A DNA stretch of 63,315 nt, the filler included, from Octopus bimaculoides (taxonomy: Eukaryota), in the NCBI RefSeq assembly GCF_001194135.2. It is 6 parts of 5 records of this genome, joined end to end, with 100 filler letters (N's around TTAATTAATTAA, not from the genome) between each part and the next. Parts side by side here need not be neighbours in the genome. Positions count along the whole stretch, not along the records: positions 10,101 to 33,856 come from NC_069006.1; 5 more parts are not named here. One strand, given 5' to 3'. This document shows positions 18,687 through 19,572 of this stretch, in pieces. The position numbers were made by a program, and so were the translations under genes. Numbering within the stretch: position 1 is the first letter of the stretch; every line of letters begins with the position of its first letter. A model generated the notes under the pieces. That model had not been told where the DNA came from, searched no databases, and saw only the letters and a program-made list of their open reading frames with translations.

Positions 18687-19332
18687 TGCGCACTCACACA
18701 CTGTATTTGCTTGCTAATAATGTTGCACTATTATCTGTACTTGATTTTTTAACTGAGAGAAACTTGATTGTGGTTTCTACATAAGTAAATTTAGTGTGTA
18801 TGTATCATTGTCATCATCATCATCATCTTTTCATGTCTGTTTTTCCATGCTGACATGGGTTGGACAGTTTGACAGGAGCCAGCAAGGCTGAGACCTGTGA
18901 CATGTTCCATTGTCAGTTTTGACTTGTTTCCTATGGCTGTATGCCCTTCGTAAAGCCAATCGCTTTACTGAATGTGCTGGGTGCTTTTTTTTTTGTGGCA
19001 CCAACACCAGTGCTTTTAATGTGGCACCAGCACTCCTGCAAGGTACTTGGGTTACTAAGTACCTTGCAAGACAAAAAGAAAATATGATATATACTCACTT
19101 GCCCCATGCCATAAAAAGTGACAGCTAATTATAGTAGGTTAGAGTTGAAACGTTGTTTGATTTTTCTTTTCAGCATTGAATGTTTACCATCCCACTTCCA
19201 TTGCACATACACACACACACACTTATTTATATAAATAAGGATAAGATCAATATTTAAATACCGATTTTATCAGGTGGCCAGCATGGGAATAAAAACCATC
19301 AAAGGTCATAATAATTATTAAAATTATAATTA

Positions 19333-19572
19333 AGGGTATCTAAGAGATACCACCACGCTGGAAATAGCAGTCAAAACTTGACTCTAAAACCACATTAAAT
19401 GTTCATATAGCACCAGGAGAGAAGACGGAGTGACAAAATAAACTAGCAAAAATTACTGGATAATTCCAGATCCTGGATTTCTGGCTCTTCGTCTTCTCTC
19501 CTGGTGCTATATGAACATTTATTATAAGTTTTGACTGCTATTTCCAGTGTGGTGGTATCTCTTAGATACCCT
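19333..19572 (+). repeat. near-perfect long inverted repeat downstream of GTGGCCAGCAT
   Basis: 47-bp outer arm AGGGTATCTAAGAGATACCACCACGCTGGAAATAGCAGTCAAAACTT with one mismatch, plus an inner arm TAAATGTTCATATAGCACCAGGAGAGAAGACGGAG; right arm runs up to a gap. Confidence 0.95.

What the first reader, a model, noticed from the sequence alone, without database searches (positions are those of the whole stretch)
19264..19572. Fold-back element family: GTGGCCAGCAT followed by a 200-300 nt hairpin (best copy)
Seen: the 11-mer GTGGCCAGCAT (19274, 10341, and 40160 on minus) is followed 30-50 nt later by a long hairpin at all three loci. The arms differ strongly between loci, sharing only traces such as GAAA(G)TAG...AA(A/T)AACCAC, yet each left arm closely matches its own right arm. 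In this copy the only two substitutions in about 80 paired bases are both G-U on the motif strand. Inference: an old repeat family whose arms are co-maintained or re-copied at each replication, asymmetric and therefore unlike an ordinary TIR MITE. It could be a structured retroelement UTR, a non-autonomous hairpin retroposon, or a source of dsRNA/endo-siRNA. I do not recognise it as a described family.
Basis: partly seen in the sequence, partly recalled or inferred. Interest (0 to 1): 0.75.

Follow-up and report, generated by a model that had tools for sequence, protein, structure and literature searches.

The report
Diverged foldback repeat with one-sided leader
Two old, related copies of a small non-coding fold-back repeat sit in a repeat-crowded animal genome; this is probably an ordinary unclassified mobile-element relic, and nothing here shows a special hairpin-copying mechanism.

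Summary
A long hairpin follows 32-45 nt later at both sites: 10384-10606 (z = -11.8) and 19330-19575 (z = -20).

The 19274 hairpin is cut off by an assembly gap at 19576. The two loci are truly related. Similarity starts abruptly at the 12-mer and runs at about 65-70% through the AT-rich outer stem and left arm to a shared AAAACCAC at the apex. Sequence upstream of the 12-mer is unrelated, and the 12-mer has no inverted partner, so the unit is asymmetric.

The G-U argument is not significant (8 G·U against 3 A·C, p about 0.11). Fold-backs are common here, with five in 18.9 kb. "Compensatory" arm changes follow automatically when two hairpins are aligned.

My best reading is two diverged copies of an unclassified MITE-like fold-back repeat. 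Retroposon, local-duplication and dsRNA-gene readings remain open.

Copy number, element ends, target-site duplications and expression are therefore all untested.

The parts
10341..10352 (+). Copy 1: conserved 12-mer GTGGCCAGCATG, the probable 5' boundary of the repeat unit
   Evidence: Exact match. The 48 nt upstream are not similar between the copies. Sequence downstream is similar.
10341..10383 (+). Copy 1 leader: the 12-mer, then AATAAAA, then a small local stem-loop and AGGTAAT
   Evidence: Alignment to copy 2; small 5' stem-loop in the MFE fold
10384..10470 (+). Copy 1 left arm: AT-rich outer stem 10384-10399, an 8-nt bulge, then the inner stem
   Evidence: (I10)
10471..10527 (+). Copy 1 apical region, which begins GTAGTAAAAAACCAC
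10528..10606 (+). Copy 1 right arm. It is followed immediately by (GT)9 and the head of a SINE.
   Evidence: The same (GT)n-plus-SINE-head junction recurs at 32894-32982.
19274..19285 (+). Copy 2: conserved 12-mer GTGGCCAGCATG
19274..19329 (+). Copy 2 leader. The AT-rich stretch 19309-19329 probably forms an outer stem whose partner lies in the gap.
   Evidence: It aligns to the paired outer AT stem of copy 1. The pairing across the gap is an inference.
19330..19379 (+). Copy 2 outer left arm
   Evidence: I15: 50 nt, 96% complementary
19380..19391 (+). Copy 2: 12-nt bulge on the left arm only, GACTCTAAAACC. It carries the AAAACCAC shared with the apex of copy 1.
19397..19520 (+). Copy 2 inner stem-loop: a stem of about 35 bp with a loop of about 50 nt. 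It is either part of one continuous stem or a second small fold-back nested in the loop. It is flanked by TA or ATT on both sides.
   Evidence: (I17). The nested reading is an inference and remains undecided.
19526..19575 (+). Copy 2 outer right arm, cut off by the assembly gap
19576..19908 (.). Run of 333 N that hides the 3' end of copy 2

Best explanation
The two loci are diverged copies (about 35% apart) of one unclassified, non-coding fold-back repeat. The repeat resembles a MITE and sits in a genome full of SINEs and microsatellites. The SINEs look octopus-like to me, but that is from memory and is unverified.

Anatomy of the unit:
- It begins at GTGGCCAGCATG.
- A leader of 35-45 nt follows. 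It contains AATAAAA and a small stem-loop.
- An AT-rich outer stem and a more GC-rich inner stem come next.
- The apex starts with AAAACCAC.
- In copy 2 the apex also carries an extra 35-bp stem, which may be a second small fold-back inserted in the loop.

Why arms match within a copy but not between copies (inferred): each copy descends from a different sub-lineage of a palindromic element. Its two arms were alike at insertion, and may also be homogenised by mismatch repair or gene conversion within the palindrome.

Mobility (inferred): movement would depend on a transposase supplied in trans.

Effect if transcribed (inferred): read-through from a host gene would fold the unit into long dsRNA. 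In a cephalopod such dsRNA is expected to be unwound by ADAR hyper-editing rather than diced.

Shown here: the anatomy, the relatedness of the two copies, the asymmetry and the lack of coding capacity. Inferred only: mobility, the mechanism of movement and any RNA-level consequence.
For: - Both hairpins are far beyond chance.
- The 12-mer is exact at both loci, and collinear similarity continues downstream through the outer stem, the left arm and AAAACCAC.
- The sequences upstream of the 12-mer are unrelated, which gives a sharp 5' boundary.
- There is no coding capacity. Only short ORFs are present, and the 83-aa ORF across copy 1 has no relatives.
- No Rfam family matches either element at E <= 1, and no tRNA-like head was found.
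- Fold-backs of 130-350 nt are frequent in this piece, five in 18.9 kb. One of them lies next to a decayed mariner-like transposase.
- Octopus has an exceptionally high share of loci that form near-perfect dsRNA, and palindromic DNA-transposon repeats are a known source of such structures (PMC5625713).
Against: - Only two copies were seen. They lie 9 kb apart on the same strand, so mobility itself is not shown.
- The 12-mer leader lies outside the inverted arms and has no inverted partner, which is atypical for a MITE.
- No target-site duplication could be read. The ends of copy 1 are AT-rich and self-complementary, and a SINE abuts its right end. The right end of copy 2 lies in the gap.
- Both copies fold 14-17 kcal/mol better on the + strand (against 44, 45), and G·U outnumbers A·C by 8 to 3. 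This hints weakly at an RNA-level or strand-specific process.
Confidence: 0.5

Rival explanations
1. Hairpin retroposon or structured retroelement RNA. The unit is transcribed from the motif strand. One arm is re-synthesised from the other at each retrotransposition, for example by snap-back self-priming of the cDNA. ADAR editing of the dsRNA intermediate leaves A-to-G changes that appear as G·U pairs.
For: - The unit is asymmetric with a sharp 5' boundary at the 12-mer.
- Arms within a copy are far more alike than arms between copies.
- G·U to A·C is 8 to 3 on the motif strand.
- The + strand folds 14-17 kcal/mol better in both copies.
Against: - The strand bias is not significant (p about 0.11), and the z-scores of the two strands are similar.
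- No Pol III head or known RNA family was found.
- No 3' tail or target-site duplication is visible. The (GT)9 after copy 1 belongs to the adjacent SINE.
- The pattern of arm similarity is equally well explained by sub-lineage descent.
Confidence: 0.15
2. Old local duplication rather than a dispersed family. A single fold-back locus was duplicated about 9 kb away on the same strand. Each palindrome then kept its arms alike through intra-palindrome gene conversion.
For: - Only two copies were seen. They share the same orientation and lie 9 kb apart.
- Divergence between copies is high, yet the arms within each copy are alike.
Against: - Similarity stops sharply at the 12-mer and does not continue into the flanks.
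I could not check it.
Confidence: 0.12
3. Two unrelated fold-back elements that each happen to sit beside a shared short sequence. The cause would be chance or insertion next to the same older repeat.
For: - Fold-backs occur about once per 3.8 kb here.
- Two random 120-nt windows of this piece share a complex 11-mer 1.3% of the time, because of repeats.
- Similarity in the flanks outside the 12-mer is individually weak.
Against: - Collinear similarity continues from the leader into the outer stem and left arm, and reaches AAAACCAC at the apex. None of 4636 control windows reaches the observed score with copy 2 as query.
- The side, strand and spacing are the same at both loci.
Confidence: 0.1
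4. A hairpin-RNA gene that yields small RNAs (hpRNA, endo-siRNA or a giant miRNA). The 12-mer plus the AT-rich stretch might act as a promoter.
For: - The stems are long and near-perfect.
- The conserved 12-mer lies 32-45 nt upstream, with TATA-like sequence in between. This comes from reading the sequence only.
Against: - No miRNA family matches either element.
- T4 runs inside the right arms (10563-10566 and 19530-19533) would stop Pol III before the stem is complete.
- A survey found no dedicated endo-siRNA pathway in molluscs (PMC12479628).
- No expression data could be obtained.
Confidence: 0.05
5. Assembly artefact. A spurious inverted duplication formed at a contig end next to the gap.
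For: The right arm of copy 2 ends exactly at an N gap.
Against: - The arms of copy 2 differ by a 12-nt indel and several substitutions.
- Copy 1 is not next to a gap and has 12 mismatches.
- Contig breaks at true palindromes are expected in short-read assemblies.
Confidence: 0.03

Closest known systems
Fold-back or palindromic MITEs, that is, non-autonomous DNA transposons. An example is the palindromic Harbinger repeat of Xenopus cited in PMC5625713.
   Same: - The unit is short (about 200-330 nt), non-coding and AT-rich at its ends.
- Its two long inverted arms abut a small loop.
- It lies in a genome with many such structures.
- It would form dsRNA if transcribed.
   Different: - A conserved leader of 35-55 nt starting with GTGGCCAGCATG lies outside the inverted arms and has no inverted partner.
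- No target-site duplication could be read.
- The arms are not conserved between the copies.
Drosophila hpRNA loci, which are sources of endo-siRNA
   Same: Long inverted-repeat hairpins that evolve quickly between copies while the arms stay complementary
   Different: - hpRNA arms derive from target genes and are shown to yield 21-nt siRNAs. Neither feature could be tested here.
- Molluscs are reported to lack a dedicated siRNA pathway (PMC12479628).
Inverted SINE pairs such as Alu-Alu, which serve as ADAR substrates
   Same: They give a local dsRNA-forming structure in a repeat-rich genome. Copy 1 is itself bracketed by an inverted pair of SINEs (10215-10276 and 10632-10693).
   Different: Here the hairpin is a single unit with abutting arms. 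It is not two independent insertions of a known SINE.
Helitrons and Helentrons
   Same: Asymmetric ends with a hairpin near one terminus
   Different: - Helitron hairpins are 16-20 nt and lie next to a CTRR 3' end, with TC at the 5' end.
- Here the termini are GTGG... and ...AATT, and the hairpin is longer than 220 nt.

Membership tests
MITE / fold-back DNA transposon | Inverted repeats forming the two halves or ends of a short element | tested here: met
   Arms 10384-10470 with 10528-10606, and 19330-19379 with 19526-19575, plus the inner stem
MITE / fold-back DNA transposon | Both termini of the unit are inverted copies of each other | tested here: not met
   Similarity between the copies starts at GTGGCCAGCATG, 32-45 nt outside the arms. 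No inverted copy of the 12-mer with one mismatch or fewer exists in the piece. A SINE abuts the right side of copy 1 and the right side of copy 2 lies in a gap, so a displaced partner cannot be excluded.
MITE / fold-back DNA transposon | Target-site duplication of fixed length | tested here: inconclusive
   The ends of copy 1 are AT-rich and self-complementary, so TA or TTAA cannot be told apart from an extension of the arms. The right flank is (GT)9 plus a SINE. The right end of copy 2 is hidden by N.
MITE / fold-back DNA transposon | Many dispersed copies | not testable with these tools
   No DNA collection of this organism was reachable. Only two copies lie in the piece.
MITE / fold-back DNA transposon | No coding capacity | tested here: met
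   Only short ORFs are present. The 83-aa ORF has no relatives.
SINE / non-autonomous retroposon | Head derived from tRNA, 5S or 7SL with an internal Pol III promoter | tested here: not met
   ARAGORN found no tRNA-like sequence. No Rfam family matched either element at E <= 1.
SINE / non-autonomous retroposon | A 3' A-rich or short-repeat tail and variable-length target-site duplications | tested here: inconclusive
   The (GT)9 after copy 1 recurs in front of another SINE head (32894-32982), so it probably belongs to the SINE. The 3' end of copy 2 is in the gap.
hpRNA / endo-siRNA locus | Transcription and 21-23-nt small RNAs from the arms | not testable with these tools
miRNA precursor or ribozyme-bearing retrozyme | Match to a curated RNA family (miRNA, hammerhead and similar) | tested here: not met
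   The Rfam scan at E <= 1 gave only sub-threshold mir-297-type hits on TA/TG microsatellites elsewhere. Nothing fell at 10341-10606 or 19274-19575.
Helitron | A 5' TC, a 3' CTRR and a short subterminal 3' hairpin | tested here: not met
   The termini read directly are GTGGCC... and ...TTATTAATT. The hairpin is longer than 220 nt.

The most novel reading that the evidence does not exclude
An asymmetric hairpin retroposon family of a cephalopod. Its RNA starts at GTGGCCAGCATG. Its second arm is re-synthesised from the first at every round of retrotransposition, by snap-back priming. Its copies carry fossil ADAR A-to-G footprints, seen as an excess of G·U pairs on the motif strand.
Probability: 0.08. 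Interest if true: 0.65.

Novelty: new member of a known kind. Interest (0 to 1): 0.25.

Why it matters
If this is only a diverged fold-back repeat, it adds one more unclassified family to a genome where unknown repeats are already a large class. Such repeats are often discarded from analyses (PMC8967140). The family would still contribute to the unusually large pool of dsRNA-forming loci that feeds ADAR hyper-editing in octopus (PMC5625713).

It would matter more if a genome-wide census showed two things. The first is arms that stay identical within old copies. The second is a motif-strand excess of G·U pairs. Together they would point to a replication mode that regenerates the hairpin, or to RNA editing recorded in DNA.

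Tried and rejected
Sequencing runs
No read, expression, small-RNA or copy-number evidence could be obtained, and I did not try read laying with guessed run ids.

Searches for more copies or for DNA of this genome
- The metagenome scan with GTGGCCAGCATGN{1,2}AATAAAA gave 119 hits. All were bacterial coding sequence, which I recognise as the GGQ motif region of peptide-chain release factors. None carried a hairpin. Irrelevant.
- Three protein-database searches found nothing: the copy 1 ORF, a SINE-derived ORF and the mariner remnant.
- The exact-product look-up of the 511-aa ORF found nothing.
- Scans of viral contigs and genome contigs with arm sequences and with a SINE 21-mer gave zero hits.
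- A full-text search for the sequences returned only unrelated mouse primers.

Hypotheses tested and rejected
- Rfam: no family matches either element.
- tRNA-like head: none found.
- Inverted partner of the 12-mer: none found, even allowing three mismatches near either copy.
- Pol III snRNA-type promoter driving the hairpin: rejected, because T4 runs lie inside the right arms.
- piggyBac-like ends in copy 2 (TTAA followed by GGG...CCC): rejected, because the orientation is opposite to the piggyBac CCC...GGG.
- Covariation between the copies as evidence of selection: rejected as circular for two self-complementary sequences.

Full report
**Setting**

The piece 10101-33856 is 39% G+C and is broken by ten internal N gaps. 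It is crowded with microsatellites and SINE copies. From memory the SINE sequences look like octopus SINEs. I could not verify the organism with any tool.

**Checking the observation**

GTGGCCAGCAT is exact at 10341 and 19274 on the + strand. No other match with one mismatch or fewer exists on either strand. The identity extends one base further, to GTGGCCAGCATG.

Both downstream hairpins are real.
- Copy 1 (10384-10606) folds at -109.3 kcal/mol, against -55.6 for shuffles (z = -11.8).
- Copy 2 (19330-19575) folds at -166.7 kcal/mol, against -61.7 for shuffles (z = -20.2).
- The hairpin starts 32 nt after the motif in copy 1 and 45 nt after it in copy 2.

Comparing each left arm with its own right arm gives these counts.
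- Copy 1 has 67 matches, 12 mismatches and an 8-nt indel.
- Copy 2 has two near-perfect blocks totalling about 80 bp.
- Copy 2 also has a 12-nt bulge on the left arm only (GACTCTAAAACC), flanked by two mismatches.

The right arm of copy 2 stops exactly at the gap 19576-19908, so its outer end is unknown. By alignment with the paired outer stem of copy 1, the AT-rich stretch 19309-19329 probably pairs with sequence inside the gap (inference).

An assembly artefact is unlikely. The arms of copy 2 differ by an indel and by substitutions, and copy 1 is not next to a gap.

**Are the two loci related?**

BLAST finds only a 110-nt match at 66% identity around the motif, and no match between the arms.

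I then removed the 12-mer from the test to avoid ascertainment bias. The 48 nt upstream are no more alike than shuffles or random AT-rich windows (p about 0.4-0.57). The 48 nt downstream are marginally alike (p about 0.03-0.08).

A collinear local alignment runs from the AT-rich outer stem through the left arm to a shared AAAACCAC at the start of the apex. It scores 20. That score is reached by 2.9% of genomic control windows with copy 1 as query, and by 0 of 4636 with copy 2 as query. The core of the left arm aligns at about 68% over 44 nt (18 of 500 shuffles reach it).

I conclude that the loci are homologous at about 65-70% identity. Homology begins abruptly at the 12-mer, which is therefore the probable 5' boundary of the unit. 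No inverted copy of the 12-mer exists, so the unit is asymmetric as far as it can be seen. One reservation applies: a SINE abuts the right end of copy 1, and the right end of copy 2 is missing.

Between the copies, nine or ten of 27 homologous stem positions differ, and nearly all of these differences are mirrored on the other arm. This is circular. Any alignment of two self-complementary sequences shows such "compensation". It shows only that each copy is a hairpin.

The G-U point is weak. Two of two transitions falling on one strand has p = 0.25. Copy 1 has 6 G·U against 3 A·C. Pooled, the count is 8 to 3 (binomial p about 0.11, my arithmetic).

Both copies fold 14-17 kcal/mol better on the + strand (against 44, 45). 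However, the z-scores of the two strands are similar. A strand-specific RNA-level signal is therefore suggested at most, and not shown.

**Base rate**

The piece holds five local fold-backs in 18.9 kb of non-N sequence:
- copy 1;
- copy 2;
- 23953-24084;
- 27807-28160;
- 29146-29304.

Only the two copies carry the motif (and my reading of the flanks). Literature agrees that Octopus bimaculoides has an exceptionally high share of loci able to form long, near-perfect dsRNA, together with extreme hyper-editing. Palindromic DNA-transposon repeats are a known source of such structures in frog (PMC5625713).

**Anatomy**

The unit is built in this order:
- the 12-mer;
- AATAAAA, after one or two bases;
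- a small local stem-loop in which the motif pairs with a downstream AGGT(A/C)AT;
- an AT-rich outer stem;
- a more GC-rich inner stem;
- an apex beginning with AAAACCAC.

In copy 2 the apex also holds a 35-bp near-perfect stem (19397-19520), flanked by TA or ATT on both sides. Copy 1 has only a 57-nt apex at this position. The extra stem may be a second small fold-back nested in the loop, or part of one continuous stem with a bulge. I could not decide between the two.

**What it is not**

- No Rfam family (miRNA, ribozyme, snRNA or other) matches either element at E <= 1.
- There is no tRNA-like head.
- There is no coding capacity with relatives.
- The ends are not Helitron-like.
- T4 runs inside both right arms argue against a Pol III hairpin gene.

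**Best explanation (confidence about 0.5)**

These are two diverged copies of an unclassified MITE-like fold-back repeat with a one-sided leader. Each copy would descend from its own sub-lineage, which explains why arms match within a copy but not between copies. Gene conversion within the palindrome may also contribute.

If transcribed by read-through, the unit would form dsRNA. In a cephalopod this dsRNA is more likely an ADAR substrate than a source of siRNA, because molluscs are reported to lack a dedicated siRNA pathway (PMC12479628).

Rivals that remain open:
- a hairpin retroposon (0.15);
- an old local duplication (0.12);
- unrelated fold-backs beside a shared short sequence (0.10);
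- an hpRNA-type gene (0.05);
- an assembly artefact (0.03).

**Limits**

Every route to more DNA or reads from this genome failed or was closed. Copy number, element ends, target-site duplications, expression and Dfam/Repbase membership are therefore all untested. The verdict rests on two copies.

Noticed in passing
window 23107-23444: A tandem array of 3.4 units of 100 bp with 97% matches. The unit is the head region of the tRNA-type SINE in reverse orientation, and the array starts at the edge of gap 22307-23106. It looks like a SINE-derived satellite.
   Followed up: partly
window 27807-28160 and 28170-29000 (- strand): A 354-nt fold-back with arms of about 135 nt at 91% complementarity lies directly beside a decayed, internally deleted mariner-like transposase remnant. 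The remnant keeps its N-terminal and C-terminal parts, with frameshifts and stop codons. No database relatives were returned.
   Followed up: partly
window 10101-10280 (-) and 10607-10785 (+): Copy 1 sits exactly between the heads of two tRNA-type SINE copies in inverted orientation (arms 10215-10276 and 10632-10693, 85-88% complementary). This forms a second, larger potential stem around the element.
   Followed up: partly
window 10607-10625 and 32963-32982: A (GT)n or (AC)n run lies directly in front of the SINE head in two separate SINE copies. The microsatellite therefore seems to travel with that SINE or to mark its insertion site.
   Followed up: no
window 23953-24084 and 29146-29304: Two further small fold-backs without the 12-mer. 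The first has 60-nt arms at 92% with a 12-nt loop. The second has 60-nt arms at 85% with a 41-nt loop.
   Followed up: no
window 10353-10359 and 19287-19293: The canonical polyadenylation hexamer AATAAA follows the 12-mer by one or two bases in both copies. It sits in the loop of the small 5' stem-loop. Its significance is unknown.
   Followed up: no
window 10321-10333 and 19385-19397: The 13-mer AAAACCACATTAA lies upstream of the motif in copy 1 but inside the left-arm bulge of copy 2. Copy 1 also has AAAACCAC at its apex. The duplicate position is unexplained.
   Followed up: no
window 13576-15310 and 30934-32469: Long imperfect CT-rich low-complexity tracts give spurious ORFs of up to 511 aa. 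The 511-aa product is not on record anywhere.
   Followed up: partly
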